From the NCBI RefSeq assembly GCF_902713615.1, contig NC_052164.1, forward strand, positions 79,893,830-79,957,829: a DNA stretch of 64,000 nucleotides, read 5' to 3'. Below, piece after piece: positions 1,220-62,703 of the stretch (its first letter is position 1; each line of letters opens with the position of its first letter). The position numbers and the translations under genes are program-made. The notes below the pieces were generated by a model. That model had not been told where the DNA came from, made no database searches, and was given only the letters and a program-made list of their open reading frames with translations. The DNA is from Scyliorhinus canicula. Taxonomy: Eukaryota.

Positions 1220-1435
1220 GGTTCTACTGTCCTGAAGGTGCTTCTCAGCCAGTCCCATGCGATCTTGGTCAATACTGTGAACAGTCTAGCCTTTCGAGCC
1301 CAACTGGACCATGTGCTGCTGGGTTCCTGTGTGATGGCAATGCATCAGTCATCAACCCAAAACCCTGCCCTGCCGGACATTACTGCCCAGCGGGAACAAG
1401 ATACGCCAAACCGTGTCCACGTGGAACCCTCTCCG
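1220..1435 (+). CDS. Exon 1 in window (GFYCPEGASQPVPC...CPRGTLS)
   Basis: cttcctcAG|...|GTgag, phase 1-1, 216 nt. Confidence 0.92.
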
Positions 1436-4400
1436 GTGAGCATGTTAGCTGCATTCATTTACAGTTTTACTTTTAGAAGAAGTTTTTGTTGCATTAAATC
1501 AAAAGCTGCATTTTCCATTGTGAAGACACAAAATCAGGGAAAGATCAACTCCGCCATCATGACCTTCAACATCCTCATTAATCAATATTCTTTCCCTGAA
1601 ATTGAAAAAGAAAATCTCTCAGCCAAATTAGGAGGGAAACAATCCCTGTAGAAATTCAATCTTTTAATTGCTTCTTAAAGGAATGTTCTATGCTTTCTCC
1701 CAGTAATATCTTCTCTGCTGCATTCAAATCATCATTTTCACATCCATATGATAGATCACTGCATTTACCAAACCCCATTTGTGGAACCATGGGCAGGATT
1801 CTCCCGCAATTTGCGGGACGGCCCAAACCGTCGGCAAGAGAGTCGCGAACCACTCCGGCATTGGGCCACCCGGAAGTTGCGGAATCCTCTTCGGGGGGCT
1901 AGGCCGGCGGCGGAGGGGTTGGCACCGTGCCAACCAGCGCCGAAGGGCCGCCGCCGGCGGGTGCGAGTTGGCGCATGCGCAGGACTGCCAGCGTGTTCTG
2001 GCACATGCGCAGAACCGCTGCCGTGTTTCCTGCGCATGTGCAGGGGGTTTCTTCTCCACGCCGGCCATGGCGGAGCCTTCCAGATGCCAGCGCGGAGGGA
2101 AAGAGTTCCGCTACGGCACATAAATCGGTGGGCCCCAATCGCGGGCCAGCCCCCCCCCCCCCCCCCCCCCCCCCCCTTCCAGGGAACCCCACTAGACGGC
2201 TGACAAGCCAGGTGCCGGCAGGATGGACCATGTCCATTTCACGCCGGCGGGACTGGCCGAAACCGGGTGGCCGCTCGGCCCATCGGGGCCCGGAGAATTG
2301 CCGGCGAGGCCGCTACCAACAGCCTCCCACCGGCGCGGCGCGATCCCCGCCCCTGCCCAAAAACCGGCGGCGGGGCGGGATTCACGCCACCCCCCGGCGA
2401 TTCTCCGACCCGGCGGGGGAGGTAGGAGAATCCCGTCCCATGTATCCCAGTCCTCTGGTACAAACTCTTGATCCCAAAGGAGATGCCAGCAGCAATCCAA
2501 TTGAGTTGCTAATGCTGCAGTTTTGCTCTATGGTATTTCATGTTTTACATATAAGGAGAAAAGTAAATGAATCCTTGAAAATTTTCAGGTCTGTTACAAG
2601 TCCTTGAAAAAAATGCCAGTAGGTGGCAGACAGGCAGCACTACTTAATTCACAATTTTCTTAACTGGTGAATTCTCCAAATGTACAATACTTCTTTCAAC
2701 ATGAGTTGGGGGGGGGGGGGGGGGAGGGCGGGAAATCCTTATGTGGAAACCTGAATCATACCTGAATCTCATGTCGAAAGAAACTCCCTCTCTCACACCT
2801 TCAGAGCAAGATTCCTACTAGAATCATAGACAGAATCATAGAATCGCTATAGTCGAGAATGGGGCCATCCGGCCCGTCTGGTCTGCACTGACTCTCAAAG
2901 AGCACTCCACCATGTCCACGTCCCCCATCCCCATAACTCTATACATTACTGGGCATATAGGGGTAATTTAGTATGGTCAATCCACCCAACCTGCGCATCT
3001 TTGGCCTGTGGGCCTAAACTGGAGCACTTGGAGGAAGCCCACGCAGACACAGTGAGAATGTGCAAACTCCACACAGTCACCCAAGGCTGGAAACAAACCT
3101 GGGTCCCTGGCGGTGTGAGGCAACAGTGCTAGCCACTGTGCCACCCTATGAGAAATGCCCAGCTTCCTTATCAATAAATCCATATTCTCGATAGTGCAAT
3201 CACTCCAAGAAGAGTTATTTTGTTCAGTTTCTCAGTAACGGATGCACCCTAACAATGGGCAAAAACCTTTAAGCCAAGACCTCCAATGTGTAATTACAAA
3301 ATAAATAAATTATCTGTCCTGTTGCCCACAGTCAGGGAATGAATCTGATCTTTCTCCATTTGGTAATGGAGTTGGGGCAGAGAGATCCACGTAAACTCAC
3401 TTTCTAAGGGGTGACAACTTGTTCTACATTGTGATATTGCCCACAAAATTGAGTGGGAAATTTGGTGTAAAGATATAAAAGTTTAAATATGGACATAGAA
3501 ATCTGATCAAAAACCATGAACCGTGAGTTATGGAGAGGAAATATGCATCCTGTTTTTTTTTAATTTAAAGTGCTCAATTCTGTTTTTCCAGTTAAAGGGC
3601 AGTTTAACGTGGCCGATCCACCTACCATTCACATCAATTGGGTTGTGGGGGTGAGACCCACGCAGATAAGGGGAGAATGTGCAAACACCACACGGACAGT
3701 GACCCGGGCCAGGATCGAACTCGGGGCCATGAGGCAGCAGTGCTAACCACTGCACCATCCAGCTACCCCATTGATTTTTAATGTAGATGTGTAAAGTACT
3801 TTTTAATAGAATATATAATTAATCATGAGGTGGTTGGGATGTTTTGTTAATTGACTCTTTGTCATTTTCCTCACACCAAGTTGGTCCAGGGGGAGTTGCT
3901 TTGACTGACTGCAATCTTTGCCCATCTGGCCATTATTGTGAGACCCACGGCCTGTCGGCTCCATCAGGTTTATGTTCCGCAGGGTATTATTGTCCAGGAG
4001 GACAGAGCATATCTGAGCCTTTGGATTACATATGTTCTCCAGGTCACTTCTGTCCCGAGGTCAGCATTATTTTATATTATGTTTTAAAAAATCTTTTGGT
4101 GAAGAAGTGCAGTAAAGTAACTTCATGGAATACCATTATGATGTATAAATTTGATGTTACTGATCTGGCTTTTCCCCCATACTTTTTCCATTGATCACAA
4201 TTAGAATAAAACGTTTGCATGTAGGACAGAATCATAGACCGGGATTCTCCATTGTGTATCCGCTCCGCTACCGCTGCTACCACGAATGGAGAATTTGCCG
4301 TTCTGTCAAATCTCCCATTCACTGCAGTGGGCCCAGAGAATCCTGATGCTGTGAATGGACGGAGATTCCACCCAGAGTCTTTATTGACATCTCTGGGTTT

Positions 4401-7400
4401 GGGTACCGAGCCTTGATAGTCAGCAACTAATTGGTTTAAACCAGTGTTCTTCAAACTTTTTTTCCGGGGACCCATTTTTACCAACCGGCCAACCTTTGAG
4501 AACCAACCCTGCCGACCTTCGCGACCCACGCCGGCCAACCTGCGCAACCCACCATTTTCTCTTGCCTTGTTTGCTGCTGACAAAAATGGAGAAAATGGTT
4601 TTGGGTCCCTTTGACCCGTGTACAAGCACCTCCAATGGAACCTGTTGGATGAAGGTGAAGCCTTCTGCTGTCGGAAAGTATAGATTCTCCATCTGTCCAA
4701 AGTTCTGAATTTTTCTCCTGTAAAATTTTATTCCAATAACCCCCCCCCCCCGAACTTGGAAAAAGAATAAAAAATCAAATGCGTAAAATGAATGAAAAAA
4801 ATGAATAAAACCCACCGGAACGTGTAAAAAAAAAATGAATTTTAAAAATGAATAAAAACCACTACAAAACAAAAAGCTGCAACCTTTTAAAAAAAAAAAA
4901 AAATAGCCTCACTGCGCATGCGTGCCCGATCATCGTGCATGTGCAATTCGGCCAAATTTTCTGTGCATGCGCGCCGATCATCGTGCATGAGCAAGGCGGC
5001 CGATTTTTTACATGTTTGCGGCTGCCTGCAGCCGGCGTTATGAAAAGCGGCCCTCCCGACACCCGCCCATGACCCACCCGCAGGTCGCGCCCCCGACTTT
5101 GAAGAACACTGGCTTAAACCACTTAATATAGGGCTTCCCCCAGATCACATTTTCAAATTGCTTCTAAAGGTAGAGATAATATGATATCAGACCAAGGTTT
5201 ATGGAAAAAAAATATACAGCAGGCGATACAAAATAAGATATTAATTATTTTAGAGCAGCATAATCACTCATTCTTAGCAATAGGCTTTTGGTAACAGTCT
5301 CTGATGATGATCATGAAAGGAGATTACTATTGGTTTTATCATTTGTTTGGCTGGAGATTTCGGCCAGTATCTGAGTAAAAGATGGTGTGAATTTCTAGTT
5401 ATGCCATTTCAGGAAATTTCAAGTGATTGCATTACATTGAAGTGAAGGGCCCTTATTTCTCCATCACTTTGAAAAGGACAATAGAGATTTGAAAAAAACC
5501 TTTATGCACTGGAGGATAATTCTGTCAAATTTCAAGTCCAAATAAAAGGAACAAATTTGGCACAAAGGGATATTTTCTGACTATAATTTTCCAATTTATG
5601 TGCACACATTTGTTGAACTCAGTCAAGGCACAGTGGTATGTTTTGCTAAATCTCAGCACACTCATTTCAGGAACCTGGTTCAGCATATAAACAGTGGAAA
5701 CAGGAAAGCTAAAAATGTTGTGAACACATGTAAATTAGTTGGCCAATTGTGCGTGCACTTTCCCAGACTTTTTCAAACTGAATAATCATTCAGAATTTTG
5801 CTCTGTAACATGTACATCCATGGTTTCTGGGATAATGGAAATAGATGGAAGCTCATTGCAAGAGTTCACTAGTGTTAGTATTTTTGCAGCTACTTTATTC
5901 AACATTATGGACTGGATCTTCAAGTAGGGAGAGATTTTTCTGATGTCACTCCCACCCTGCAGTACCGGCTGACTTGACTGTCGTGTTGAGGAGTTTGTGA
6001 TTGGCTGGAGTTGAGCCTGCTGCCTCCCACAGCAGGTCTGAATTGGAGTCTGCACTAGGCTGATGCCAAGATTGCCAGGTTAAAAAGCTTACAATCATTC
6101 CCTGTGACATCAGATCAGCTCTGAAAATGGGTGTAAATCCCTAATCCTCTTCTCCCCAACCCCCATTCACCTCTCCTCCTAACCTTCCCCTCATCCCCAT
6201 TAAACCCCTTCACAATGCAGTCAGCAATAGGGACATCTCAATCAAATCTGAATTTAACTATTGTTCATTTCAGAATAGAACATTATTTAGTGGATAATGT
6301 ACTCTCATACATTTGAAGACCAATCCACTTTCACTATGCTATTCATTGTCTTGACAGCTTGCCAGATGTTAGAAGTAACAGTCTGTCAAACATATTAATT
6401 TAATGTCACTGACCTTTTGAAAACAAAGTCTTATGATTACTCACTGCACTAAAAACATAACTTATGATTCAGCATTTCCTTATGACATGTGAAGTAGGCA
6501 ATACCTTTTGTGCTTGCCTTTCATATGTTTCCTGACTCAAAACTAAGGGGCGGGAGGGCGGGATTCCCCCACCCACCCCAAGGCCACCACCCGACCCTTA
6601 CACGCCGAGGTCCCGGCAGCCCAGAGCAGGTTAGAACGGCACCGGCAGGACTCGGCTATTTTCTTAAGGCTGCTCGGCCCTTCCGCGCCAGAGATTCGGC
6701 GGACCGGCCGCGGAGAGCGGCCCGCGACCAGCGCCGCGCCACCCATGCCACGTCAACAACGCTGGCACCAATGGCTCCGATTCTCCGTTCTGCCCAGGGT
6801 TTCCCTGTGGTTCACGACACCTCTGAGCTGGATGAAACTCATCAAATTCCAAAATTAACCACATCCCTTGAAAATGTCTGAGACTTTTACATGTCCATTT
6901 CTGCAATGGAGCCAGTATTACTGGGGCATCAGTATGCACCAGGGCATTAGTGGCACAGTAGTATTGCCACTGGACTAATAATCCAGATACTGGAGTAACG
7001 TTGTGGGCATCCGGGTTCAAATCCCTCCATGACAGATGTGAAATTTCAATTTTTTTAGAAATCTGGAATTAGAAGTCTTATGCTGACCATGAAACCTTTG
7101 TTAACTATGGTTCACTAATCTGCCATGTTTACCTGGCCTACATGTGACTCCAGACCCACAGCAGTGCCCTCTGAAATGGCCTAACATGCCACTAAATGAG
7201 CAATAAATGTTGACCCAACCATGAATGAATCAAACCATGAATGGATCAAAGAAAAACTTTTGCTCCTAAAAACCATCAGCGATGAAAATGGAGGCAGGAT
7301 TCCCAGAATTGGTCCCACCCAGAAAAATCTGTCCCTGTGTATGTTATTCCGTGTTTCAATTTTGTGAGTGCATGCGAAAAGCACAGAAGAGTCGAAATGG

Positions 7401-55400: not shown

Positions 55401-57623
55401 GCAAATTATTATCTAAATGGATATAGATTGAAAGAGGGGAATGTGCAATGAGACCTGGGTGTCTTTCTACATCAGTCACTGAAAGTAAGTATGCAGGTGC
55501 AGCAGGTGGTAAAGAAGGCAAATAGTATGTTGACCTTTTATAGCAAGAGGATTTGAGCACATTGGCAGGAATGTCTTGCTGCAGTTATACAGGGTATCGG
55601 CGAGACCACACTTTGAACAGTGTGCACAGTTTTGGTCTCCTTATCTGAGGAAGGATTTTCTTACTGTAGATGGCGTGCAGAAAACGTTACCAGACTGATT
55701 CCTGGGATGGCGGTACTGACATATGAAGAGAGATTGAGTTGGTTAGGATTATATATGCAGGGGTTTTGAAGAATGATGGGGGATCGCATAGAAACCTATA
55801 AACGTCTAACAGAACTAGACAGGGAAGATGCAAGAAGGATGTTCCTTTTTTAAAATCAATTTAAAGTACCCAATTCGATTTTTCCGAATTAAGGGCAATT
55901 TAGCATGACCATTGCAAATACCCTGCACATCTTTGGGTTGTGGGGGTGAGATCCATGCAGACACAGAGAGAATGTACAAATTCCACACAGACAGTGACTC
56001 AGGCCAGGATCGAACCTGGATCCTCCACGGCATCAGGCAGCAGTGCTAACCACTGCACCACCTTGCAAGAAGGATGTTCCTAATGGCGATGGAGTCCAGA
56101 ACCAAGGATCGCAGCCGATGGCATAGTGGTTAGCACCGCTTCCTCGTAGTGCTGGGGACCCGGTTTCATTCCAGCTTTGAGTGACTGTGTGGAGTTTGCA
56201 TGTTCTCCCCATGTCTACGTGGGTTTACTCTGGGGGCTCTGGTTTCATCCCACAGTCCAAAGATATGCAGGTCAGGTGGATTGGCCATGACCAATGAGCA
56301 TGGTTACGGGGATAGGGTGAGGGAACGGGTCCTAGGTAGGTTATTCTTTCGGATGGTCATTGCAGACTCAATGAGCCAATTAGTCTCCTGAACTGTAGGG
56401 ATTCTATGGAATGCAACTATTGAGCCCATCAACTGTGTGCCGCACTCACAATTATGATGATAGACGGATGATTAGCAGCTAATAATGCACACCACAATTC
56501 AAAATAATCACTACCTTTTCAATAATGTTCATACTTCCGAATGGTTACCTTGCAATTTCATTGCTATTGCAGGATATTACTGTCTGCCGACTTTGATGAT
56601 TCCTGAGCTCTGTCTGCCAGGGTATTATTGTCTCCCTGGGACAGAGGAAGCCACTCAATATCCCTGTCCTCCAGGAACATACAATGGCCAGACAGGTATT
56701 GCAATTATTGACATTGTGATCGCAGATATGAAAATGTTTCTCACATATCTGAGCCTTCTGTGTGAAAGGCATGATTTCATAGTAGGGATTGAGACTCTGC
56801 CAATATAGAAAAGCTGCATTTACTTTTTAAAGAAAATGTTTCTGAACATGTTTTGAATTCCTGAAGAAATTTTAATGAGTTAACTGGTCGAATGAGAGAA
56901 AATGTTTCAAGATAAGTGTTGTGCTCTTGATGCTTAATTTTGTAGCAAGGGCACTAAGTTAATCCACAGTTCCATGACACACCTCACACTATCCCTTAAA
57001 CTCAAGTTCATAATATATCTCTCTTCAGGTATCAGAAGTGCGAGGGAGTGTCTGGTGTGCCCTGCAGGACAGCACTGTAATGCATCTGGCCTCACAGAAC
57101 CTTCTGGACTTTGTACTCCGGGCTATTACTGCACAGGGGGATCGACAACTGACAAACCAACAGCGAACCATTTAACTTGGAATGTTTCCTTGAACTCCAC
57201 CTCAGAGTAAGTGTTTAAAACCACCTTTTAGACCCTGTTTTTAAAATGCCATCTGATGTATTTTATTTTATGTCCATTGTGAATATACAGTGGGCGGAGT
57301 TTTTCCATTTTTTTGACCGAGAGCAGGGCCGGCTCAAGGTACCGGCAACTCGGGCAGTCGCCCGGGGCGCCATGTGCTAGGGGGCACCAACAAGGAGTGC
57401 ATGACCGGCGTCAGAGACCCGGCGCCGCGTAAACGACTCGGGTCCCACGCATGCGCAGTTGGGCCGGTGCCAACCAGCGCATGTGCGGTGGCTGCCCTCC
57501 CCCAGGCCGCCCCGCACAAACATGGCGGATGGATCCAGGCTCGCCGGTGGAAGAAAGGAGGCCTGCCGACAGAGAGACCGGCCCGCTGATCGGTGGGTCC
57601 CGATCATGTACCAGGTCATTCCG

Positions 57624-57657
<34 letters not shown>

Positions 57658-60600
57658 GTGAACGGAGCCCCCCCCCCGAAGGGCACCGAAGTTCAGCTTT
57701 CCCGGGGCGCCAGCCACCCTAGGGCCGTTTCTGCCGAGAGTCAACTCGGCCGGGAAAAGCGGGATGTCGCCCTCCGGCTGCACTGCCAGCCTTTCCAGCC
57801 AGAGTCAAAAGCAATCAAGGAGGCGGGCCCAATGACATCATGCTGGTGGGGTGGGCTTTGAATAAGCGTGCCCTGCGAGAAATTTGACTCCTGAAAGAGG
57901 AGCGCCCCAATGGAAAAAATATATTATTTCCTTCCCCCGGAAAGGAAACTCCATTCCCACCATCATGAAATCTCCCCCACCGTGGAACCCTGGCGCCTTG
58001 GAGTGTCAGGGTAAGTTCCCAGACAATGCCATGGGGTGGGTTCTGTTCGCCAGGAGAATATTGTGAGGACCTGTCGTAATTCAGACCGACGTGAATAGAC
58101 AGTCCAACTTGCAGGGAATATAAACATCTTATCTGCATGTTAATAGGGATCCCGATGTTTAAAGTTCCCCTCCCTGCTTGCTGGATCCCCTGTGCGGGGA
58201 GAGATCTCTCGAGGCTCCTGACGCAACCCCTAAGCACACTTCCCCCAAGCCCCAATTTGCCTATAAGTGGGTCCTCGGCCCCCTCCCCCGCACCCGTAAA
58301 GGGCACCCCAGGCTCGATCCCTGTTGCTTGAGTATTCCACCTTGGCAATCTGGCAGTGCCAGGCTGGCTGTGCCAGGGTGGCACCAGCAGTGTTAGGGTG
58401 CTTGCCCGGAGGGCAAGCACCTGGAGGCCTCCCATCTGCTGGGAGATGCCAACGAGTGCCGTTCCTTCTGGTCCCTGTTTTTGGAGACCAGCACTGAACG
58501 GCGCTCACCGGAAGTCTCCAAGGCGAATTCTTATCATAGAATTTACAGTGCAGAAGGAGGCCATTCGGCCCATCAGGTCTGCACCGGCTCTTGGAAAGAG
58601 CACCATACCCAAGGTCAACACCTCCACCCTATCCCCATAACCCAGTAACCCCACCCAACACTAAGGGCAATTTTGGACACTAAGGGCAATTTATCATGGC
58701 CAATCCACCTAACCTGCACACCTTTGGACTGTGGGAGGAAACCGGAGCACCCGGAGGAAACCTACGCACACACGGGGAGGATGTGCAGACTCCGCACGGA
58801 CAGTGACCCAAGCCGGAATCGAACCTGGGACCCTGGAGCTGTGAAGCAATTGTGCTAACCACAATGCTACCGTGCTGCCCACTCTCGATCTAATATCCAG
58901 ATTTGACAGTGATCCCGCCCAGAGTGAGTAATGTCATTCAGCCTTTCAAGCTTGCTCTGCTATTCAGTAAGATCATGGCCAATCTGATCTTGGCCTGTGC
59001 TCCACTTTCCTACCAGTCCTCCATAATGTTGACTCTTCAAGATTCTGGCTGGAAGAACATTCTTATTATTGTCTGGAAAAACAGGGGGATCAGCTAGTCA
59101 TCAGTCTGCAAGTCAGCTTTAAAATTCTAATTTTTTTTTGTCTTCATAGTTCCAGATAAGTCTGAAATTCCATTAACATTAAATCATATTCATTATTTTA
59201 ATGACCTTACTAGGTACAAGTGGTGTCCGGAACAATATTATTCAATAGGTGGGCTTTGCCCAGCAGGTCATTACTGTCCACCTGGATCTCCTAGTCCAGT
59301 ACCATGTGATGGAGGGAAATACTGTTCAAATCCAGGGCTTACCATGCCATCGGGTATGTTCATTCTTAAAATGCTACATGTAAATTACAGTTGAATCAGA
59401 AGGAACCCGTTTAGTTTCATGGGCTGGATTCTCTGCCGCGGGATGCTCCATTTTGCCGGCAGCCCGGGGGTTTCCCGACGGCGTGGGGCTACCCCACAAT
59501 GGGAAACCTCATTGACCAGCCGGCGTAACGGAGCATCCCGCCGACGGGAGGAACCTGAAATGTGGTGCAGAAGACTAGAGAATCCTGCCCCATAGCTTTT
59601 GCAAAGTCTGTGGTTTTAAGAAAAGTGATTTATTGAAACAGAAAAGCTGTCAGTTCTTATATTCTTTCAGTCTCCCTTTTAGTCAAATGTAAAGTGACTA
59701 ATTCTCTGTTTTTTTTTTACTCTGCTCCTGCCCTAATACTTTCCTGGCAGTACTGCTGTAAAGACATTTTCTACTGAACCCAGTGTTACCCCATAGATTT
59801 TTAAATGAATGTCTCTCTTGCAGGGGAGCACGATAGCATGGTGGTTAGCATAAATGCTTCACAGCTCCAGGGTCCCAGGTTCGATTCCCGGCTGGGTCAC
59901 TGTCTATGCGGAGTCTGCACGTCCTCCCCGTGTGTGCGTGGGTTTCCTCCGGGTGCTCCGGTTTCCTCCCACAGTCCAAAGATGTGCGGGTTAGGTGGAT
60001 TGGCCATGCTAAATTGCCCGTAGTGTCCTAAAAAGTAAGGTTAAGGGGGGGTTGTTTGGGTTACGGGTATAGGGTGGATACGTGGATTTGAGTAGGGTGA
60101 TCATTGCTCGGCACAACATTGAGGGCCGAAGGGCCTGTTCTGTGCTGTACTGTTCTAATTCTAATTCTAATTCTAATTCAATTCCGGCTTGGATTGCCTG
60201 ATTTGTGGTAGAAGTGAGATTTCTGGAGTTAAGCGCAAAGAAGAATTGTGTGATTTATGATTATTTTCCCCCACTTGCCGCAGGTGAATGTCTCGCAGGA
60301 TATTACTGCGATGCTGCCTCCACTCAGCCTGACCAACACATCTGCCCTGCTGGTCTCTACTGCCCGAGAGGCACAGCCATCCCTGTGCCTTGTCCTCCTG
60401 GTACTTACGGCAATAGCAGTAGGAACTGCGAAGAATCAGATTGCCAGCTTTGTCTCGGTGGACAGTACTGTGATGGTAAAAATGTCTAACCATGTTACAG
60501 CTAAATCTGGATCTAAGTAAAAGTTTGTGTGTCGGCAGGGTCATCAACAGAACAATGTGAACGTGCAGCTAAACATAAAATTACTCTGGCCGAATGAGAA

Positions 60601-61847
60601 ACTGTACAAGTTTAAAAGTAAATTAACATTGTAACCACTGTTCCTTCTAATCATGTTATGATTTAAAAGGACCGTTGCTTGTGTGCAGCCTGTTTGTCCC
60701 ACAAGTGGTACATTTCTGATTGCTGCATATCTTTGAGGAAATGTTCATTTTAACAGACGAGGAGATGATTTGCTCTGATAAAATTGCAGTGTGAAAAACT
60801 TGCAGTATGAATGCAATCCAAATAATTCTGTGTCGGGGAGAAAATGTATTGATGTTAGAATTCATATTTGTTTTGGTAATACTTAACACGTTCATAATGC
60901 AGCAGGAGATGGCCCAGTAATAATGTCTTTGGACTGATTTGGACCAGGTTCAATCTAAACACAAGAAAAAATCTGAAATCAAAAGCTAATCCCAGTAATG
61001 GGATGACATCTTTGGTTGATTATCATAACACCCCATCTGGCTCACTGATGCCCTTGCAGGAAGGAAATCTGCCATCCTTACCTGGCCTGGCCTACATGTG
61101 ACTACAGACTCACAGAAATGTGATTGACTCTTAACTACCCTATGAAATGGTCCAACAAACCATTCAATTGTATCAAATGCTTAAAAGAAATGAAACCGAC
61201 CAACCTAGGCACCAGACCCTGGCGACGCTGTAAATTCCTCCTTATTAGCATCTGGGGACTTGTGTCAAAATTGGAAGAGCTGTCCGACAGAATGATATGT
61301 GGGTGGGGGAAAGGAGACGGAAGACCTGAATGTCCATCTCCTCATGGGAATATGTCTGTACTCCACTCTGCATTTCCTCTCTCGTCAGCACACCCTGATT
61401 GCAGCATGGCCAAGATCAGGAACTCAACAATGAGTCAGTGAATGGCTCTTGTAGCTTCACATGCCAGTGTGTATTAATGATGCTGCACGTCCCTCATTAT
61501 GGCATCAGTGTTGCGTTTCTCATTATTTGCACAAGCGATGTGAAGGTTACTGGTCAGGTGCTTATTTATAATAAATGGTTTGTTGAAAAAACATTTCTCT
61601 AAAATGGTATTACTTCCTTTTCAAGGGCCCGGTAATGATGTCCCTGATGGTCCTTGCTCCCGGGGATTTTATTGCCCTCCGGGTCAAAGTTCACCTCGCC
61701 CCATACTGTTTGTCTGTCCAGTAAGCTTCTATTGCCCTGAAGGAACTTCCATTCCACTGCCATGCAAGGGAGGATCTTACCAAGCCAACGAAGGCCAGGA
61801 ATCATGTGACCCATGTCCAGCAGGTTTCTTTTGTCGGCTCACTAATG
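1220..61847 (+). CDS. Internal part (29 exons, ~1555 aa) of a giant cysteine-rich repeat protein, GCC2/GCC3 (Ephrin_rec_like) CPxGxYC type; 5' and 3' ends outside the window
   Basis: 29 exons with AG/GT boundaries and polypyrimidine tracts join in compatible phases (24 introns phase 1, one phase 0, three phase 2) to 4665 nt with no stop; continuous C-x2-G-x-[YF]-C repeats; many N-x-S/T sequons. Confidence 0.93.
1791..2438. mobile_element. PIF/Harbinger-type MITE (CpG-rich)
   Basis: TIRs gggcaggattctcc / ggagaatcccgtcc; TSD CAT on both sides; internal poly-C tract. Confidence 0.85.
2818..3146 (-). mobile_element. HE1-like tRNA-derived SINE
   Basis: Reverse-complement Pol III A/B-box head, conserved core, ttctatga-type tail. 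Confidence 0.85.
3551..3769 (-). mobile_element. Short poly(A)-tailed HE1-related SINE
   Basis: Same head and core as HE1, truncated core, A-rich tail. Confidence 0.8.
3881..4059 (+). CDS. Exon 2 (VGPGGVALTDCNLCPSGHYC...GHFCPE)
   Basis: caccaAG|...|GTcagc, phase 1-0; an in-frame alternative acceptor would start the exon at 3890. Confidence 0.88.
4238..4373. mobile_element. Short Harbinger-type MITE (diverged)
   Basis: gggattctcc ... ggagattccaccc ends. Confidence 0.55.
4442..5111. mobile_element. hAT (Charlie-like) non-autonomous DNA transposon
   Basis: TIR cagtgttcttcaaa / tttgaagaacactg; 8-bp TSD gtttaaac / gcttaaac. Confidence 0.85.
6547..6794. mobile_element. Deleted fragment of the GC-rich Harbinger-type MITE
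   Basis: Shares internal motifs (gccgctcggccc, attctcc) with full copies. Confidence 0.6.
6945..7215 (+). mobile_element. Old SINE-like repeat; related copy at about 60905-61150
   Basis: tRNA-like gggttcaaatcc box; shared tail segment cctggcctacatgtgactccagacccacag between the two copies. Confidence 0.55.
8096..8198 (+). CDS. Exon 3 (GSANQSSCAPGHYQ...GTYCQTP)
   Basis: ttcacAG|...|GTaaaa, phase 0-1. Confidence 0.92.
8360..8518 (+). CDS. Exon 4 (GALKPVTCQLGSYC...GMYCQGS)
   Basis: ttttcaAG|...|GTaacc, phase 1-1. Confidence 0.92.
10319..10481 (+). CDS. Exon 5 (GNTEPTGLCSAGYTC...CPKGTF)
   Basis: tacttaAG|...|GTattg, phase 1-2. Confidence 0.92.
11341..11983. mobile_element. Harbinger-type MITE lacking its left TIR
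   Basis: Right TIR ggaaaatcccgccc followed by CAT; internal similarity to 18196-18922. Confidence 0.8.
12312..12415 (+). CDS. Exon 6 (SEKQGLSEAHHCQPC...GLCWA)
   Basis: ttgacAG|...|GTaata, phase 2-1. Confidence 0.92.
12778..12957 (+). CDS. Exon 7 (GFYCLEGCATP...CTPCPS)
   Basis: cctttAG|...|GTtagt, phase 1-1. Confidence 0.92.
13195..13302 (+). CDS. Exon 8 (GFYCKEPG...PLDGLT)
   Basis: tctgcAG|...|GTacca, phase 1-1. Confidence 0.92.
13434..13757 (+). mobile_element. HE1-like SINE
   Basis: A/B-box head, core, ttctat tail. Confidence 0.88.
14297..14543 (+). mobile_element. HE1-like SINE, 5' truncated
   Basis: Core and tail only. Confidence 0.82.
14640..14850 (+). mobile_element. Short poly(A)-tailed HE1-related SINE
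   Basis: Head, truncated core and A-rich tail; flanking acaatgca repeat. Confidence 0.8.
15040..15175 (+). CDS. Exon 9 (GDICPVGHYC...GHLCTN)
   Basis: aatccAG|...|GTaagg, phase 1-2. Confidence 0.92.
16350..16488 (-). mobile_element. 3' tail fragment of the third SINE variant (as 44311-44584)
   Basis: Shared segment tagtcgccacact..gcctgttcgggtacac..aaattacctaa. Confidence 0.7.
16690..17589. mobile_element. Second non-autonomous DNA-transposon family (TGGCAC-rich interior); left end uncertain
   Basis: Right end ggttagatcaggccc; reverse-complement match to 61902-62200; interior related to about 58100-58520. Confidence 0.65.
17654..17787 (+). CDS. Exon 10 (RMQAEPCPHGSYC...CTPCL)
   Basis: ttctacAG|...|GTgaga, phase 2-1. 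Confidence 0.92.
17975..18110 (+). mobile_element. Penelope-like 3' terminal fragment
   Basis: ctctcc(c)cacagatgctg...ttcagattccagcatc motif; also at about 51630-51725 and 63230-63265. Confidence 0.6.
18196..18922. mobile_element. Harbinger-type MITE
   Basis: TIRs ggccggcattctc / gagaattccgccc; TSD CAG; close relative of 44829-45543 in opposite orientation. Confidence 0.88.
19157..19666. mobile_element. Harbinger-type MITE
   Basis: TIRs gggcggaattctcc / ggagaattgcgccc; TSD ATT. Confidence 0.88.
19963..20172 (+). CDS. Exon 11 (GGFYCSRPG...GTYNSET)
   Basis: atcctcAG|...|GTacag, phase 1-1. Confidence 0.92.
20724..21183 (+). mobile_element. CR1-clade LINE 3' fragment
   Basis: [42 protein letters not shown] is a typical CR1 ORF2 C-terminus. 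Confidence 0.85.
22183..22380 (+). CDS. Exon 12 (GQSLCQICLAGYFC...CLMCPP)
   Basis: cattcAG|...|GTaggt, phase 1-1. Confidence 0.92.
22410..22813. mobile_element. Older Harbinger-type MITE or composite
   Basis: ggcaggattt ... aaaattcaaccc ends; internal tcccgcc motifs. Confidence 0.5.
23368..24029. mobile_element. Harbinger-type MITE, same subfamily as 1791-2438
   Basis: TIRs cagcgggattctcc / ggagaatctggctg; TSD CTG. Confidence 0.85.
23937..23996 (+). repeat. (CCCCTG)n microsatellite, about 10 units
   Basis: Direct reading. Confidence 0.95.
24173..24274 (+). CDS. Exon 13 (GQFCERSG...SKPLPP)
   Basis: tttgttAG|...|GTatgt, phase 1-1. Confidence 0.92.
24750..25530 (+). mobile_element. Old, degraded CR1/L2-type LINE fragment
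   Basis: AGVPQ...LG RT motif remnant; related family at about 47530-48400 on the minus strand. Confidence 0.6.
25690..25997 (-). mobile_element. HE1-like SINE
   Basis: Head, core and tail on the minus strand. Confidence 0.85.
26548..26703 (+). CDS. Exon 14 (linker GEFTKSSECTGPADVSPGNR then CSPGFFC...LAEPT)
   Basis: cttttcAG|...|GTttga, phase 1-1. Confidence 0.9.
27092..29339 (-). mobile_element. L1-clade LINE, 5' truncated and internally deleted
   Basis: 14-bp TSD acagcaggattatt (27078-27091, 29340-29353); A-rich tail; ORF2 motifs ISLLNMDAKILAKVLA and IQLKVVYRAHLT; stops and frameshifts. Confidence 0.9.
28201..28922. mobile_element. Harbinger-type MITE nested in the L1 element
   Basis: TIRs gggcggaattctcc / agagaatcgcaccc; TSD CAT; removal restores L1 peptide ANVEKVWSWVRG. 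Confidence 0.9.
30291..30628 (+). mobile_element. HE1-like SINE, young subfamily
   Basis: Near-identical to 59824-60183. Confidence 0.9.
31173..31355 (+). CDS. Exon 15 (GPCDTGYYC...CLQCTP)
   Basis: tattctAG|...|GTatac, phase 1-1. Confidence 0.92.
31729..31890 (+). CDS. Exon 16 (GFFCEGIG...DPCPK)
   Basis: tttgttAG|...|GTaaaa, phase 1-1. Confidence 0.92.
32345..32670 (-). mobile_element. CR1-clade LINE 3' fragment
   Basis: RNYFSQRVVNLWNSLPQ motif and tail. Confidence 0.8.
33410..33616 (+). CDS. Exon 17 (GFYQARKGQPDCNAC...GLTSA)
   Basis: tcaatAG|...|GTaaat, phase 1-1; absent from the ORF track. Confidence 0.92.
33774..34002 (-). mobile_element. Short poly(A)-tailed HE1-related SINE
   Basis: 14-bp TSD cttacgttatatct / cttatgttatatct. 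Confidence 0.88.
34495..34674 (+). CDS. Exon 18 (AECDLCPPGQFC...AGSTA)
   Basis: gattctAG|...|GTaaga, phase 1-1. Confidence 0.92.
35218..35730 (-). mobile_element. Rex1/Babar-type LINE 3' fragment
   Basis: LTNIYRRTMESIFSGCITAWYGACSTQDHRKLQKVV is typical of the Rex-Babar ORF C-terminus; (aaatc)n tail. Confidence 0.8.
35763..36364. mobile_element. Harbinger-type MITE (diverged)
   Basis: TIRs ggacgggattttcc / ggagaatcaagccc; TSD not clean. Confidence 0.75.
36758..36907 (+). CDS. Exon 19 (GVDCPVGRYG...GYYCKL)
   Basis: aaaacAG|...|GTaact, phase 1-1. Confidence 0.92.
37510..38900 (-). mobile_element. Degraded Gypsy/Ty3 gag-protease fragment
   Basis: Gag remnant LVCGVNNEATQKKFLAE, zinc-knuckle remnant CYTCG, protease KVNGRILWMEVDIGS, KYQDVFQEELGKI; many stops. 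Confidence 0.8.
39053..39175 (+). CDS. Exon 20 (GAQTPNPDNKTYGVIC...YNPST)
   Basis: ttctcAG|...|GTatga, phase 1-1. Confidence 0.92.
40072..42380 (+). pseudogene. Decayed Harbinger Myb/SANT-like (Myb_DNA-bind_5, NAIF1/MSANTD-like) gene; exons about 40072-40289, 40511-40667, 40822-42380
   Basis: MAAPRRFAPR..LDAVEERRAILCP..NWRDVGISVSA..EQCCKKLHD then NKTAHNHRGHARTGRG; GT/AG introns; frameshifts and a TAG at 42147. Confidence 0.78.
41568..42125 (+). repeat. 21-bp minisatellite TCTCAGCAGGCCATGGC[GC]CAG, 26 full units plus a partial, encoding heptad SQQAMAQ
   Basis: Direct count: (42114-41568)/21 = 26. Confidence 0.97.
43035..43500 (+). mobile_element. CR1-clade LINE 3' fragment
   Basis: MLPGM..SYEESLSRLGLFSL, IEVYKIMRG, TRGH motifs; (ttcttg)n-like tail. 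Confidence 0.85.
44086..44220 (+). CDS. Exon 21 (GRGSLAACLPC...QPNPQ)
   Basis: ttcgtAG|...|GTatgt, phase 1-1. Confidence 0.92.
44311..44584 (-). mobile_element. HE1-related SINE with a third, unrelated 3' tail
   Basis: Same head and core; after the core it diverges to a tail shared with 16350-16488. Confidence 0.8.
44797..45686 (+). mobile_element. HE1-like SINE remnant interrupted by a MITE
   Basis: Core continues across the insert (gggtttcctctgggttatctg|atttcctcacggtccaaag). Confidence 0.75.
44829..45543. mobile_element. Harbinger-type MITE
   Basis: TIRs gggcggaattctcc / ggagaatttcaccc; TSD CTG. Confidence 0.9.
46060..47087 (+). mobile_element. Ancient Deu-domain-type SINE (SacSINE1/AmnSINE1-like), split by a mini-MITE (46180-46270) and a solo LTR
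   Basis: gagggagtgctgc..ggaggtgcc..tttgaatgagatg core and tgtataaatgcaag tail recalled as DeuSINE-like; reverse copy around 25555-26160. Confidence 0.55.
46448..46990 (+). mobile_element. Solo LTR
   Basis: TG...CA ends with inverted termini tgtcatg / cataaca; AATAAA at 46831. Confidence 0.75.
47234..47458 (+). CDS. Exon 22 (DGESGGVCPGGFYC...SPCPA)
   Basis: ttttcAG|...|GTgagt, phase 1-1. Confidence 0.92.
47530..48400 (-). mobile_element. Old CR1/L2-type LINE 3' fragment
   Basis: MQQHLDKIQAGADK and LSTIYKAK-type ORF2 remnants; related + strand piece at about 45800-46050. Confidence 0.65.
48402..48740 (+). mobile_element. L1-clade ORF2 C-terminal fragment
   Basis: RVNASTSCVRLESIQLKVVHRAHLT, same family as 27092-29339. 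Confidence 0.75.
48852..50300 (-). mobile_element. CR1-clade LINE 3' part interrupted by a MITE
   Basis: HVQQAIKRANGMLAFVARRLEYRS and RFTRLIPG..EERL motifs. Confidence 0.85.
49423..50105. mobile_element. Harbinger-type MITE, same subfamily as 19157-19666
   Basis: TIRs gggcggaattctct / ggagaattgcgccc; TSD AAT. Confidence 0.9.
50386..50517 (+). CDS. Exon 23 (GTYGGRIG...GHYCIS)
   Basis: acttcAG|...|GTaagc, phase 1-1. Confidence 0.92.
51066..51391 (+). mobile_element. HE1-like SINE
   Basis: Head, core and tail. Confidence 0.88.
52666..52830 (+). CDS. Exon 24 (GVNIPNPG...CRTCPA)
   Basis: ttttcAG|...|GTaaat, phase 1-1. Confidence 0.92.
54264..54505 (+). mobile_element. Short poly(A)-tailed HE1-related SINE
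   Basis: 13-bp TSD ataaaagatttaa. Confidence 0.88.
54832..55158 (-). mobile_element. HE1-like SINE inside the CR1
   Basis: Head, core and (ttctatg)n tail. Confidence 0.88.
55847..56063 (-). mobile_element. Short poly(A)-tailed HE1-related SINE
   Basis: 18-bp TSD tgcaagaaggatgttcct (55829-55846, 56064-56081). Confidence 0.88.
56110..56408 (+). mobile_element. HE1-like SINE (older)
   Basis: Head, core and tail. Confidence 0.8.
56573..56695 (+). CDS. Exon 25 (GYYCLPT...YNGQT)
   Basis: attgcAG|...|GTattg, phase 1-1. Confidence 0.92.
57029..57206 (+). CDS. Exon 26 (GIRSARECLVC...linker HLTWNVSLNSTS)
   Basis: tcttcAG|...|GTaagt, phase 1-2. Confidence 0.9.
57324..57733. mobile_element. hAT-like MITE
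   Basis: cagggccggc... / ...gggccgtttctg ends; flanking direct repeat ccgagag. Confidence 0.65.
58533..58880 (-). mobile_element. HE1-like SINE
   Basis: Full head, core and tail. Confidence 0.9.
59214..59353 (+). CDS. Exon 27 (EYKWCPEQYYSIGGLCPAGHYC...LTMPS)
   Basis: ttactAG|...|GTatgt, phase 2-1. Confidence 0.9.
59421..59590. mobile_element. Short (170 bp) Harbinger-type MITE
   Basis: TIRs gggctggattctct / agagaatcctgccc; TSD CAT. Confidence 0.85.
59824..60183 (+). mobile_element. HE1-like SINE, young subfamily
   Basis: (ttctaa)n tail; near-identical to 30291-30628. Confidence 0.9.
60284..60475 (+). CDS. Exon 28 (GECLAGYYC...GQYCD)
   Basis: gccgcAG|...|GTaaaa, phase 1-1. Confidence 0.92.
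61626..61847 (+). CDS. Exon 29 (GPGNDVPDGPCSRGFYC...CRLTN); gene continues beyond the window
   Basis: tttcaAG|...|GTgaga, phase 1-1. Confidence 0.92.
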
Positions 61848-61901
61848 GTGAGAAAGTTGATATACTATTATAGCCAGTTTCTAATTTGCGTGACAGAGCA
61901 C

Positions 61902-62200
61902 AGGCGGGATCTAACCAAATTGTAGCAGAGACCCGTGACAAGCGCTTTTAGCCGATTGTTTTCCAGTGTTTGCAGCACCAAGAAACACCACGCTATCTAT
62001 CAGGACTTTGTTACAATCCGGGGCCTCAGCGGGGAATGCAGTTAGTCCTGTGTCCTGCACTGAGGAGCTCCTCCCGCCAGAACTCAGTGCAGGAAGAGAT
62101 CGGGACACCATTTTTATAGGCGTTCCAATCTCTCAAACACCCCCCCCCCCCCCCCCCTCCTGACATGACCCCCAAACTCCCCCAAAGCCTCACCTCATGC
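61902..62200. mobile_element. One end of the 16690-17589 transposon family
   Basis: aggcgggatctaacc terminus; reverse complement of about 17320-17589. Confidence 0.7.
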
Positions 62201-62383: not shown

Positions 62384-62703
62384 GGGCAGCAAGGTAGCGC
62401 AAGTGGGTCGCACTGTGGCATCACAGCGCCAGGGTCCCAGGTTCGATTCCCCGCTGGGTCACTGCCTGTGCGGAGTCGGCACGTTCTCCACATGTCTGCG
62501 TGGGTTTCCTCCGGGTGCTCCGGTTTCCTCCCGAAGTCCAAGGACGTGCCGGTTGGGTGGATTGGCCATGATAAATTGGAGAGTGACCAAAATGGTTAGG
62601 AGGGATTATTGGGTTACAGGGAAAGAGTAGAAGTGGGGGCCTAAGTGGGTCGGTGCAGACTCAATGGGCCGAATGGCCTCCTTCTGCACTGTATGTTCTG
62701 TGT
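62384..62703 (+). mobile_element. HE1-like SINE
   Basis: Head, core and tail. Confidence 0.88.

What the first reader, a model, noticed from the sequence alone, without database searches (positions are those of the whole stretch)
1220..61847. Hidden macro-repeat of about 690-700 aa on top of ~80-aa modules
Seen: the spliced protein aligns to itself colinearly. GFYCPEG (codon 1, exon 1), GFFCPEG (codon 688, exon 14) and GHYCPPG (codon 1389, exon 27) start three units, giving periods of 687 and 701 aa. Irregular landmarks recur in register: CPGGQS / CPEGQS / CPPGQS; GHYQ / GFYQ / GSYQ; DGITGD in exons 5 and 18; CDVCPAG..YCPEGTG in exons 9-10 and 22; SGVNTP..GNGGEC versus SGVNIP..GSGGKC. Inference: a super-repeat reminiscent of titin or nebulin, suggesting a molecular ruler or a filament with periodic binding sites.
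Basis: partly seen in the sequence, partly recalled or inferred. Interest (0 to 1): 0.7.

Follow-up and report, generated by a model that had tools for sequence, protein, structure and literature searches.

The report
Ancient 690-residue super-repeat in shark gene
The window holds part of a shark gene for a giant, unstudied cell-surface protein in which nine cysteine-rich modules in a fixed order form a roughly 690-residue unit that repeats in tandem. The same units can be matched one to one in rays, lancelets, acorn worms and echinoderms, so the repeat is real and very old, but nothing shows it acts as a ruler.

Summary
A 29-exon, stop-free reading frame of 1551 codons (+ strand, 1220-61847) aligns to itself. 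The strongest diagonal is at offset 696 aa, where 42% of 30-aa windows score high, against 19% at the 78-aa module period. Nine modules cut at CxxCxxGxxC have lengths 71-53/60-78-78-75-52-79-56/54-147/152, and this series recurs.

The gene is the catshark ortholog of an uncharacterised giant single-pass membrane protein. It is 79% identical to a bamboo-shark protein and 71% to a 7861-aa stingray protein. Relatives occur from protists to birds under misleading automatic names.

The macro-unit is ancient. The same length series occurs in echinoderms, a hemichordate, amphioxus and an ichthyosporean. Modules cluster by position within the unit, not by neighbour. Shark unit 1 and unit 2 each group with a specific unit of invertebrate deuterostomes (support 99-100). 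Only one intron position is shared between units, and no exon DNA similarity remains.

The fold is a TNFR/ephrin-receptor-like disulfide ladder. Its nearest solved relative is the cysteine-rich rod of the Chlamydomonas mastigoneme protein MST1.

The ruler or periodic-binding-site idea is untested. In-register conservation is mostly scaffold residues, units carry their own conserved residues, and unit number varies between lineages. RNA reads gave no expression support.

The parts
1220..61847 (+). 29 coding exons of one gene. The gene runs off both ends of the window. Exons: 1220-1435, 3890(or 3881)-4059, 8096-8198, 8360-8518, 10319-10481, 12312-12415, 12778-12957, 13195-13302, 15040-15175, 17654-17787, 19963-20172, 22183-22380, 24173-24274, 26548-26703, 31173-31355, 31729-31890, 33410-33616, 34495-34674, 36758-36907, 39053-39175, 44086-44220, 47234-47458, 50386-50517, 52666-52830, 56573-56695, 57029-57206, 59214-59353, 60284-60475, 61626-61847.
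   Evidence: All junctions are AG/GT and the frame is 1551 codons with no stop. It is 79% identical to Chiloscyllium P0210 with two small gaps, 71% to Hemitrygon P0182, and 51-52% to hemichordate and amphioxus proteins with almost no gaps.
1220..3909 (+). Last module (9b, 78 aa) of the preceding macro-unit (U0).
   Evidence: Its best matches are modules 9b of U1 and U2. In the stingray ortholog a further complete unit lies upstream at 3731-4428.
3910..31336 (+). Macro-unit U1, residues 79-767. Modules are 71-53-78-78-75-52-79-56-(64+83) aa.
   Evidence: It is orthologous to the penultimate unit of amphioxus, Glandiceps, Antedon and Asterias (support 100/100).
31337..60441 (+). Macro-unit U2, residues 768-1466. 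Modules are 71-60-78-78-75-52-79-54-(71+81) aa.
   Evidence: It is orthologous to the last full unit of the same species (support 99/99).
60442..61847 (+). Start of the terminal, degenerate unit U3: module 1 (71 aa) and 14 aa of module 2.
   Evidence: In full-length homologues this unit continues as 71-58-87-77-53-81-7x-55-90-5x-54-12x/131 and is followed by the membrane helix.
24241..26615 (+). Cys-poor variable linker at the end of module 9a of U1 (residues about 650-683, exons 13-14).
   Evidence: Module 9a is the only module whose length varies widely, from 47 to 84 aa. The equivalent stretch is the only low-confidence part of the AF2 model, at residues 587-618.
57139..59265 (+). Cys-poor variable linker of U2 (residues about 1345-1384, exons 26-27) with two N-x-S/T sequons (NVS, NST).
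   Evidence: Sequence, with the same evidence as for the U1 linker. The exon 26/27 junction (57206/59214) is the least certain one. The bamboo-shark protein has 3 more residues there.

Best explanation
The window carries about a fifth of the catshark ortholog of an uncharacterised giant type-I membrane protein. It corresponds to residues about 4350-5900 of a protein of about 7900 residues, judged from the stingray ortholog.

The ectodomain is a chain of ephrin-receptor-like / TNFR-like cysteine-rich modules. There is a long class of 71-81 aa with 8 Cys and a short class of 52-60 aa with 6 Cys. Nine modules in the fixed order L-S-L-L-L-S-L-S-(L, variable linker, L) make one macro-unit of 685-700 aa with about 37 disulfides. 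The window holds the tail of one unit, two complete units and the head of the terminal degenerate unit.

The units arose by duplication of a whole nine-module block before the deuterostome ancestor. For at least one unit this was before the placozoan-bilaterian split, and the nine-module order is already present in an ichthyosporean. Each unit has since been kept as an individual ortholog, with module lengths constant to within 1-2 residues.

Shown here: the repeat itself, its module order, its age, the one-to-one orthology of units, and the fold class.

Inferred: each unit is a stiff disulfide-laddered rod of roughly 35-40 nm. Units are joined by a short Cys-poor, glycosylated, length-variable linker. 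Together they build a very long segmented cell-surface stalk, and the position-specific module lengths are kept for structural reasons. No ruler function is demonstrated.
For: Repeat and its significance.

The same module-length series appears without any profile, from raw CxxCxxGxxC spacing, in Chromosphaera, crinoids, sea urchin, starfish, hemichordate, amphioxus, stingray, bamboo shark, Hydra and Trichoplax.

Tiled full-length matches to the unit profile: six in P0001 and three in P0009.

Module trees: the position label needs 11 changes against 58.6 when shuffled (long class), and 7 against 21.6 (short class). The unit label is no better than random.

Unit tree: shark U1 and U2 fall in separate clades with invertebrate units at support 100/100 and 99/99. 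Identity of U1 to U2 is 45%, while U1 to its amphioxus ortholog is 53%.

Only 1 of 14 intron positions mapped from one unit frame to the next coincides with an intron there. 22 of 28 introns are phase 1 inside a Gly codon. There is no exon-exon DNA similarity between the two units.

Architecture of homologues is signal peptide, Cys-rich ectodomain, one membrane helix and a conserved tail.

Fold: the AF2 model has pLDDT 88, with only the linker at low confidence. Foldseek hits are the MST1 rod (E 4e-20), ELAPOR1 and TNFRs, and a profile hit to MST1 has E 1.4e-13.

Length estimate: the MST1 cysteine-rich domain measures 26 nm for 26 disulfides (PMC11015965) with about 11 A spacing (PMC10602792), read. 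The shark units have 74-75 Cys each.
Against: No RNA reads cover exons 25-29 in four RNA runs of the species, so neither expression nor the splice junctions have transcript support.

The rod length and the hinge are inferred from a model with pTM 0.43, and I could not read its coordinates.

The unit profile was built from the shark units, so profile-based unit calls lean towards that phase. The raw spacing series is independent of it.

Within the shark protein alone, modules 3-5 are as similar to each other as to their in-register partners.

P0001 and P0009 come from unnamed organisms.

The function of the family is unknown, so a structural-stalk role is a guess.
Confidence: 0.75

Rival explanations
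1. The super-repeat is functional periodicity. Each unit of about 690 aa presents equivalent sites at a fixed spacing. These would bind a periodic partner or let molecules pack side by side in register into an extracellular fibre, as titin and nebulin super-repeats do inside the cell or as MST1 rods do in mastigonemes.
For: Module lengths within the unit are constant to 1-2 residues from an ichthyosporean to a shark. Some non-scaffold residues are invariant at one position of every unit, for example the Gln of CP.G.YQ in module 1 and the G.GG.C and GTG motifs. The only solved homologue, MST1, polymerises through exactly this kind of cysteine-rich rod (PMC11015965).
Against: 180 of the 210 columns conserved in register are C, G, P or Y. 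A further 160 columns are conserved in only one of the two units, and 9 are fixed differences, so the units are not equivalent. Unit number varies: about 2-3 in chicken, about 3 plus the terminal unit in Chromosphaera, about 6 in stingray, and 9 or more in P0001. No partner is known. The homodimer prediction scored 0.00, which is not evidence either way. The alignment to MST1 is patchy and reaches only the domain-family level.
Confidence: 0.12
2. The repeat is a recent tandem duplication of a block of exons in the shark lineage, or has been homogenised by gene conversion. In that case it would carry no deep significance.
For: Tandem exon-block duplication is the usual origin of such repeats. 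The three Chromosphaera units group together in the first tree.
Against: U1 and U2 are only 45% identical and share no detectable exon DNA similarity. Only one intron position is shared. Each unit is closer to a specific unit of amphioxus, hemichordate and echinoderms than to its shark neighbour, with support 99-100.
Confidence: 0.01
3. The 690-700 offset is only a harmonic of the 78-aa module period in a low-complexity Cys/Gly/Pro-rich sequence.
For: Offsets 78, 156, 618 and 774 also score high. In-register identity exceeds same-class out-of-register identity by only about 0-14 points per module, and module 2 is slightly lower in register.
Against: Offset 696 has more than twice the hit fraction of offset 78. 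The irregular length series 71-5x-78-78-75-52-79-5x-15x recurs exactly. The observed order beats all 300 module-order shuffles and all 300 class-preserving shuffles. Modules cluster by position across species.
Confidence: 0.01

Closest known systems
Uncharacterised giant membrane proteins of other animals. Examples: Chiloscyllium plagiosum 'zonadhesin isoform X4' (P0210), Hemitrygon akajei 'uncharacterized protein isoform X3' (P0182, 7861 aa), Narcine bancroftii XP_069750647.1 'notch 4-like', Glandiceps LOC144439946, Asterias LOC117306372, Anneissia LOC117121631, and Trichoplax TRIADDRAFT_55968.
   Same: They are colinear orthologs at 79%, 71%, 63% and 51-52% identity over the whole 1551 aa. 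They have the same nine-module units, the same terminal unit and the same juxtamembrane motif.
   Different: There is no difference in kind. Elasmobranchs lack about 25 aa in module 2 of U1 that invertebrate deuterostomes have. The automatic names (zonadhesin, SCO-spondin, notch, trichohyalin, fibrillin) are not backed by any domain match found here.
Chlamydomonas mastigoneme protein MST1 (PDB 8wa2, 9b4h, 8tx1), cysteine-rich domain.
   Same: It has the same fold class, a growth-factor-receptor / ephrin-receptor-like disulfide ladder. It is the best structural match (E 4e-20) and the only strong sequence-profile match among solved structures (E 1.4e-13). It is an extracellular rod 678 aa and 26 nm long (PMC11015965).
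   Different: MST1 is secreted, has nine Ig-like domains and a poly-hydroxyproline helix, and has 26 disulfides in its rod. The family here has a membrane helix, a long cytoplasmic tail, no Ig or polyproline part seen, and about 37 disulfides per unit. The alignment is patchy, with no colinear nine-module order.
Titin A-band and nebulin super-repeats.
   Same: All have a hierarchical repeat in which domains at the same position of successive super-repeats are more alike than neighbours. The units are old and individually conserved.
   Different: Those are intracellular Ig/Fn3 or actin-binding modules whose period matches a partner filament. Here the modules are extracellular and disulfide-rich, no periodic partner is known, and in-register conservation is mainly scaffold residues.
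Pfam Ephrin_rec_like (PF07699, formerly GCC2_GCC3) repeats, as in ELAPOR1, SVEP1, SCUBE and Eph receptors.
   Same: The modules match this family, and ELAPOR1 is the second structural hit.
   Different: Known members carry a few such repeats among other domains. Here thousands of residues consist only of them, in two length classes that the 48-aa Pfam model covers only partly.

Membership tests
Ephrin_rec_like / GCC2_GCC3 (PF07699) repeat proteins | A match to the Pfam model above its gathering score. | tested here: met
   Exon 29 scores 25.3 bits against a cut-off of 23.1. Other single exons fall just below it because exons cut the domain. Narcine ortholog P0075 scores 72.6 bits and stingray P0182:1-1600 scores 162 bits.
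TNFR / growth-factor-receptor cysteine-rich fold | A beta-hairpin ladder stapled by regularly spaced disulfides. | tested here: met
   The AF2 model of the orthologous crinoid unit has pLDDT 88 and paired short strands every 18-20 aa. Foldseek hits are the MST1 rod, ELAPOR1, TNFR family members and the EphA2 CRD.
Giant single-pass membrane protein family (unnamed; 'zonadhesin-like' or 'SCO-spondin-like' in automatic annotation) | Colinear identity to full-length members that have a signal peptide, a Cys-rich ectodomain, one membrane helix with a PDW motif, and a conserved tail. | tested here: met
   The window protein is 71% identical over 1547 aa to P0182, which has a signal peptide and a membrane helix at 7173. 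It is 79% identical to P0210. Tails are homologous between crinoid and Chromosphaera (E 9e-168), Fabomonas (E 3e-49) and Kipferlia (E 4e-10). The membrane helix and tail of the shark gene itself lie outside the window.
Super-repeat proteins (titin/nebulin type) | Same-position modules of different units are more alike than neighbouring modules. | tested here: met
   The position label needs 11 changes against 58.6 when shuffled, and 7 against 21.6. The unit label is at random level. Shark U2 against the crinoid unit has 10 of 10 modules best at the same position.
Super-repeat proteins (titin/nebulin type) | The period matches the axial repeat of a partner filament (ruler function). | not testable with these tools
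   No partner is known. The unit length of about 37-41 nm is only an estimate from MST1 geometry.
MST1 mastigoneme proteins | A secreted protein with a cysteine-rich rod followed by a poly(hydroxy)proline helix (plus Ig-like domains in MST1) that polymerises into a filament. | tested here: not met
   Full-length homologues have a membrane helix and a long Cys-free tail instead. No Ig domain was found by Pfam. The sequence match is patchy, and self-association was not shown.
Zonadhesin / SCO-spondin / Notch (names given by annotation pipelines) | VWD/TIL/MAM domains, TSP1/LDLa domains, or EGF/LNR/ANK domains respectively. | tested here: not met
   The only Pfam matches are Ephrin_rec_like, NCD3G, TNFR_ELAPOR1_6th and Il2rg, in the window exons and in the parts of the homologues that were scanned.

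The most novel reading that the evidence does not exclude
The nine-module unit, estimated at about 37-40 nm, is the registration unit of an ancient extracellular fibre or cell-surface link. Molecules of this giant membrane protein, which is about as old as the last eukaryotic common ancestor, would pack side by side in register through their cysteine-rich rods, as MST1 does in mastigonemes. The conserved module lengths would then set a periodic lattice read by a partner, and the conserved cytoplasmic tail would couple it to the cytoskeleton. This would be an extracellular counterpart of a titin-like ruler.
Probability: 0.1. Interest if true: 0.8.

Novelty: new member of a known kind. Interest (0 to 1): 0.5.

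Why it matters
Higher-order repeats whose individual units stay orthologous over more than half a billion years are well known from titin and nebulin. They are rarely documented for extracellular cysteine-rich proteins.

Here the repeat marks out a protein family of 4000-8000 residues. It occurs in placozoans, cnidarians, lophotrochozoans, echinoderms, hemichordates, amphioxus, tunicates, sharks, bony fishes, frogs, reptiles and birds, and in several protist lineages. No mammal appeared among the best 120 hits, and my searches found no described function or paper for the family.

The fixed nine-module order and near-invariant module lengths show that the ectodomain has a defined architecture rather than being an arbitrary string of repeats. 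That gives a rational way to cut it into units for expression, structure determination and binding studies. It also corrects misleading database names such as zonadhesin, SCO-spondin and notch-like.

If the periodicity proves functional, this would be a new kind of extracellular spacing device.

Tried and rejected
RNA support. Four RNA runs of the same species were laid on 56400-62000. Depth on exons 25-29 was zero, and reads covered only intronic interspersed repeats. This gives no support for splicing and is not evidence against the gene.

Homodimer test. Two copies of residues 105-600 of the crinoid unit scored 0.00 with no verdict. This is neither for nor against binding. Two earlier attempts found the machine busy.

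Rotation test. Rotating unit 2 by whole modules was uninformative, because free end gaps let the alignment slide back into register. I used shuffles instead.

Tail annotation. Pfam on the cytoplasmic tails of six homologues found nothing. A PDB sequence search with the crinoid tail found nothing. The ESM Atlas gave no usable hit (one search was a format error).

Other look-ups. Literature searches for the Pfam names and for a zebrafish gene name found no description of the family. Two searches failed on syntax. A word search of the scan's notes found nothing on this gene.

Rejected idea. I tested whether the MST1 rod is a colinear homolog of one macro-unit. The alignment is patchy and out of phase, so I rejected it.

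Not possible. I could not read the AF2 coordinates, so no end-to-end length was measured.

Full report
OBSERVATION

Cys-rich open segments with splice-site scoring gave 29 exons between 1220 and 61847. All have AG/GT borders, and 24 of the 28 introns are phase 1. They join into 1551 codons without a stop.

The model is validated by orthologs.
- The bamboo-shark protein P0210 is 79% identical over all 1551 residues with two small gaps.
- The stingray protein P0182 is 71% identical.
- Hemichordate and amphioxus proteins are 51-52% identical and almost gap-free.

One of the two gaps shows that exon 2 probably begins at 3881 rather than 3890. The second period is 701 in both models. The exon 26/27 junction lies in a variable linker and is the least certain.

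Four RNA runs of the species gave zero depth on exons 25-29. There is therefore no transcript support.

IS THE MACRO-REPEAT MORE THAN HARMONICS?

In an ungapped self-comparison the best diagonal is offset 696. There, 345 of 826 30-aa windows score 60 or more (42%). Offset 78 reaches 19%, and offsets 774, 618 and 156 are lower. Twice the period (1385 and 1388) reaches about 33%.

Unit 1 against unit 2 is 45% identical over 681 columns with 25 gap columns.

Cutting the protein at every CxxCxxGxxC gives module lengths 71-53-78-78-75-52-79-56-147, then 71-60-78-78-75-52-79-54-152, then 71. This irregular series recurs exactly.

The in-register score is 1668. It exceeds all 300 shuffles of module order (1126 +/- 80) and all 300 shuffles that keep long and short modules in place (1282 +/- 91).

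Within the shark protein alone, positions 1, 6, 7, 8, 9a and 9b pair by position. The three canonical 78-aa modules (positions 3-5) do not.

WHAT THE GENE IS

An exhaustive profile search with one exon returned 150 giant proteins.

Complete members have four parts:
- a signal peptide;
- an ectodomain of thousands of residues with about 10% Cys;
- one membrane helix preceded by a conserved PDW motif;
- a Cys-free cytoplasmic tail of 600-2700 residues.

The tails are homologous between a crinoid and an ichthyosporean (E 9e-168), an ancyromonad (E 3e-49) and a metamonad (E 4e-10).

Members occur in elasmobranchs, teleosts, frogs, reptiles, birds, tunicates, amphioxus, hemichordates, echinoderms, molluscs, a brachiopod, a nemertean, Hydra, Nematostella and Trichoplax. 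Protist members include Chromosphaera, Fabomonas, Kipferlia, Chilomastix, Bodo and Aphanomyces. No mammal is among the best 120 hits.

The automatic names are zonadhesin, SCO-spondin, notch 4-like, trichohyalin-like and fibrillin-2-like. The only Pfam matches are Ephrin_rec_like, NCD3G, TNFR_ELAPOR1_6th and, in the stingray tail, Il2rg. Those names are therefore misnomers.

I found no paper describing the family. One preprint lists zebrafish si:ch211-286b4.4 as testis-biased (10.1101/650218). That name is given to a Betta member of the family. This is a weak lead only.

Earlier notes of this scan call the genome a catshark. The 79% identity to the bamboo shark fits that.

AGE OF THE MACRO-UNIT

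The period of about 690-705 aa is the top or a leading diagonal in the Narcine ortholog and in two Chromosphaera proteins. It is weaker in a crinoid protein. It also shows in several unnamed proteins.

A profile of the shark unit finds six tiled full-length units in P0001 and three in P0009.

Raw CxxCxxGxxC spacing is independent of the profile. It gives 71-59-78-78-75-52-77-56-135 in Chromosphaera and 71-61-78-78-75-52-78-54-161 in crinoids, urchin, starfish and hemichordate. It gives 71-60-78-78-75-52-79-54-152 in stingray. The terminal series before the membrane helix is nearly the same in all of them.

Even the 56 versus 54 difference in module 8 between the penultimate and last units is shared from echinoderms to shark.

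In trees of 90 long and 45 short modules from 15 units, the position label needs 11 and 7 changes. Shuffled labels need 58.6 and 21.6. The unit label is at random level.

In a careful tree of 31 whole units:
- shark U1 groups with the penultimate unit of bamboo shark, stingray, amphioxus, hemichordate, crinoid and starfish (100/100);
- shark U2 groups with their last unit (99/99);
- the stingray unit upstream of U1 groups with a third unit of hemichordate and amphioxus (100/99);
- a Trichoplax unit pairs with a fourth hemichordate unit (100/98).

U1 is 45% identical to U2 but 53% identical to its amphioxus ortholog.

Only one of 14 intron positions mapped from one unit frame to the next coincides. 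22 of 28 introns sit in phase 1 inside a Gly codon at CAG|G.

All 76 blastn matches between the two genomic halves lie in introns.

The block duplication therefore predates the deuterostome ancestor and probably the placozoan-bilaterian split. The repeat is invisible at the DNA level.

Fabomonas has a shorter unit of about 270 aa (L-S-137), so the nine-module form may be specific to holozoans.

Unit number varies:
- about two to three in chicken;
- three plus the terminal unit in Chromosphaera;
- about six in stingray;
- nine or more in P0001.

STRUCTURE

I modelled the crinoid unit orthologous to shark U2 with AF2, using an alignment of 21 units. The model has pLDDT 88 and pTM 0.43. The only low-confidence stretch is 587-618, inside module 9a. 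Module 9a is also the only module of widely variable length, from 47 to 84 aa. In the shark it carries a Cys-poor stretch with two N-glycosylation sequons.

Foldseek against the PDB puts the Chlamydomonas mastigoneme protein MST1 first (E 4e-20), then ELAPOR1, then TNFR-family and EphA2 cysteine-rich domains. A sequence profile of the unit hits MST1 at E 1.4e-13. The alignment is patchy, so the relation is at domain-family level only.

The MST1 cysteine-rich domain is 678 aa with 26 disulfides and is 26 nm long. It mediates filament assembly (PMC11015965). Its ladder spacing is about 11 A (PMC10602792). With 74-75 Cys per shark unit, a unit would be roughly 37-41 nm. This is an inference, not a measurement.

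HOW IT MOST LIKELY WORKS

The best-supported reading is a segmented extracellular stalk. Each macro-unit is a stiff disulfide-laddered rod joined to the next by a short flexible glycosylated linker.

The super-repeat is the trace of an ancient block duplication. Its modules have since been held at fixed lengths.

Three results count against identical periodic binding sites.
- 180 of the 210 columns conserved in register in both the U1 and U2 clades are C, G, P or Y.
- 160 further columns are conserved in only one clade, and 9 are fixed differences.
- Unit number differs between lineages.

Two results keep a periodic or self-assembling role open. Module lengths are near-invariant, and a few non-scaffold residues are invariant at a single position of every unit. 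MST1 also sets a precedent for filament assembly through such rods. A homodimer prediction gave no verdict.

I put the ruler or filament reading at about 0.1.

NOVELTY AND LIMITS

Super-repeats are a known kind of architecture, and the module is a known Pfam domain. This finding is therefore a new member of a known kind.

What is new:
- the nine-module unit;
- its one-to-one orthology across animals;
- the recognition that a widespread, mis-named giant membrane protein family has a defined architecture.

Limits:
- there is no transcript evidence;
- the membrane helix and tail of the shark gene lie outside the window;
- two key comparison proteins come from unnamed organisms;
- rod length and the hinge are model-based;
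- the literature search covers only open-access text.

Noticed in passing
window 41560-42127: A 21-bp minisatellite with 27 copies at 95% match lies in intron 20. It translates as long repeats in all three + frames.
   Followed up: partly
window 58457-59017 and 59766-60326: Intronic interspersed repeats are covered by hundreds to thousands of RNA reads on both strands, with many chimeric and inverted joints. The flanking exons have no reads. The reads most likely come from other copies of these repeat families.
   Followed up: no
window 13436-13750, 14296-14541, 30303-30621, 51073-51390, 54836-55148, 58536-58875, 59841-60179, 62389-62699: A SINE-like family of about 310 bp (77-92% identity between copies, both orientations) is scattered through the introns. 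A second, GC-rich family of about 700 bp is at 18203-18906, 44857-45536 and 11338-11965.
   Followed up: partly
all 28 introns, 1436-61625: 22 of 28 introns are phase 1 inside a Gly codon at a CAG|G-type site. Yet only one intron position is shared between macro-units. This looks like repeated independent intron gain at protosplice-like sites in the many Gly codons.
   Followed up: partly
window 8159-8478 (module 2 of U1): This module is 53 aa in catshark, bamboo shark and stingray (53-55 aa) but 80 aa in amphioxus, hemichordate and echinoderm orthologs. The deletion of about 25 aa maps next to the very short intron 3 (161 bp).
   Followed up: partly
homologues P0182, P0004, P0005, P0017, P0190, P0193 (N-terminal 1000-1500 aa): The N-terminal part of the ectodomain is a run of 20-35 much shorter repeats of 32-33 aa. 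After a transition zone the nine-module units begin. Fabomonas has a macro-unit of about 270 aa instead.
   Followed up: partly
P0002 (Blastocystis sp., 4710 aa): This protein is an almost perfect tandem array of a 104-aa unit. 98% of windows match at offset 104. It is a recent expansion, unlike the old diverged units of the animal proteins.
   Followed up: no
P0182 residues 7724-7808 (stingray tail): The tail matches Pfam Il2rg (PF15874, 'putative interleukin 2 receptor gamma chain') at E 2.4e-19. This poorly named family may derive from the tail of this protein family. The invertebrate tails scanned gave no Pfam match.
   Followed up: no
L001 1001-11534 (metagenome contig, P0009 and the next gene): P0009 is encoded without introns. 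It is followed 260 bp later by a 5454-aa gene of the same family. The pair is probably one gene split by the gene caller, from an unnamed intron-poor eukaryote.
   Followed up: no
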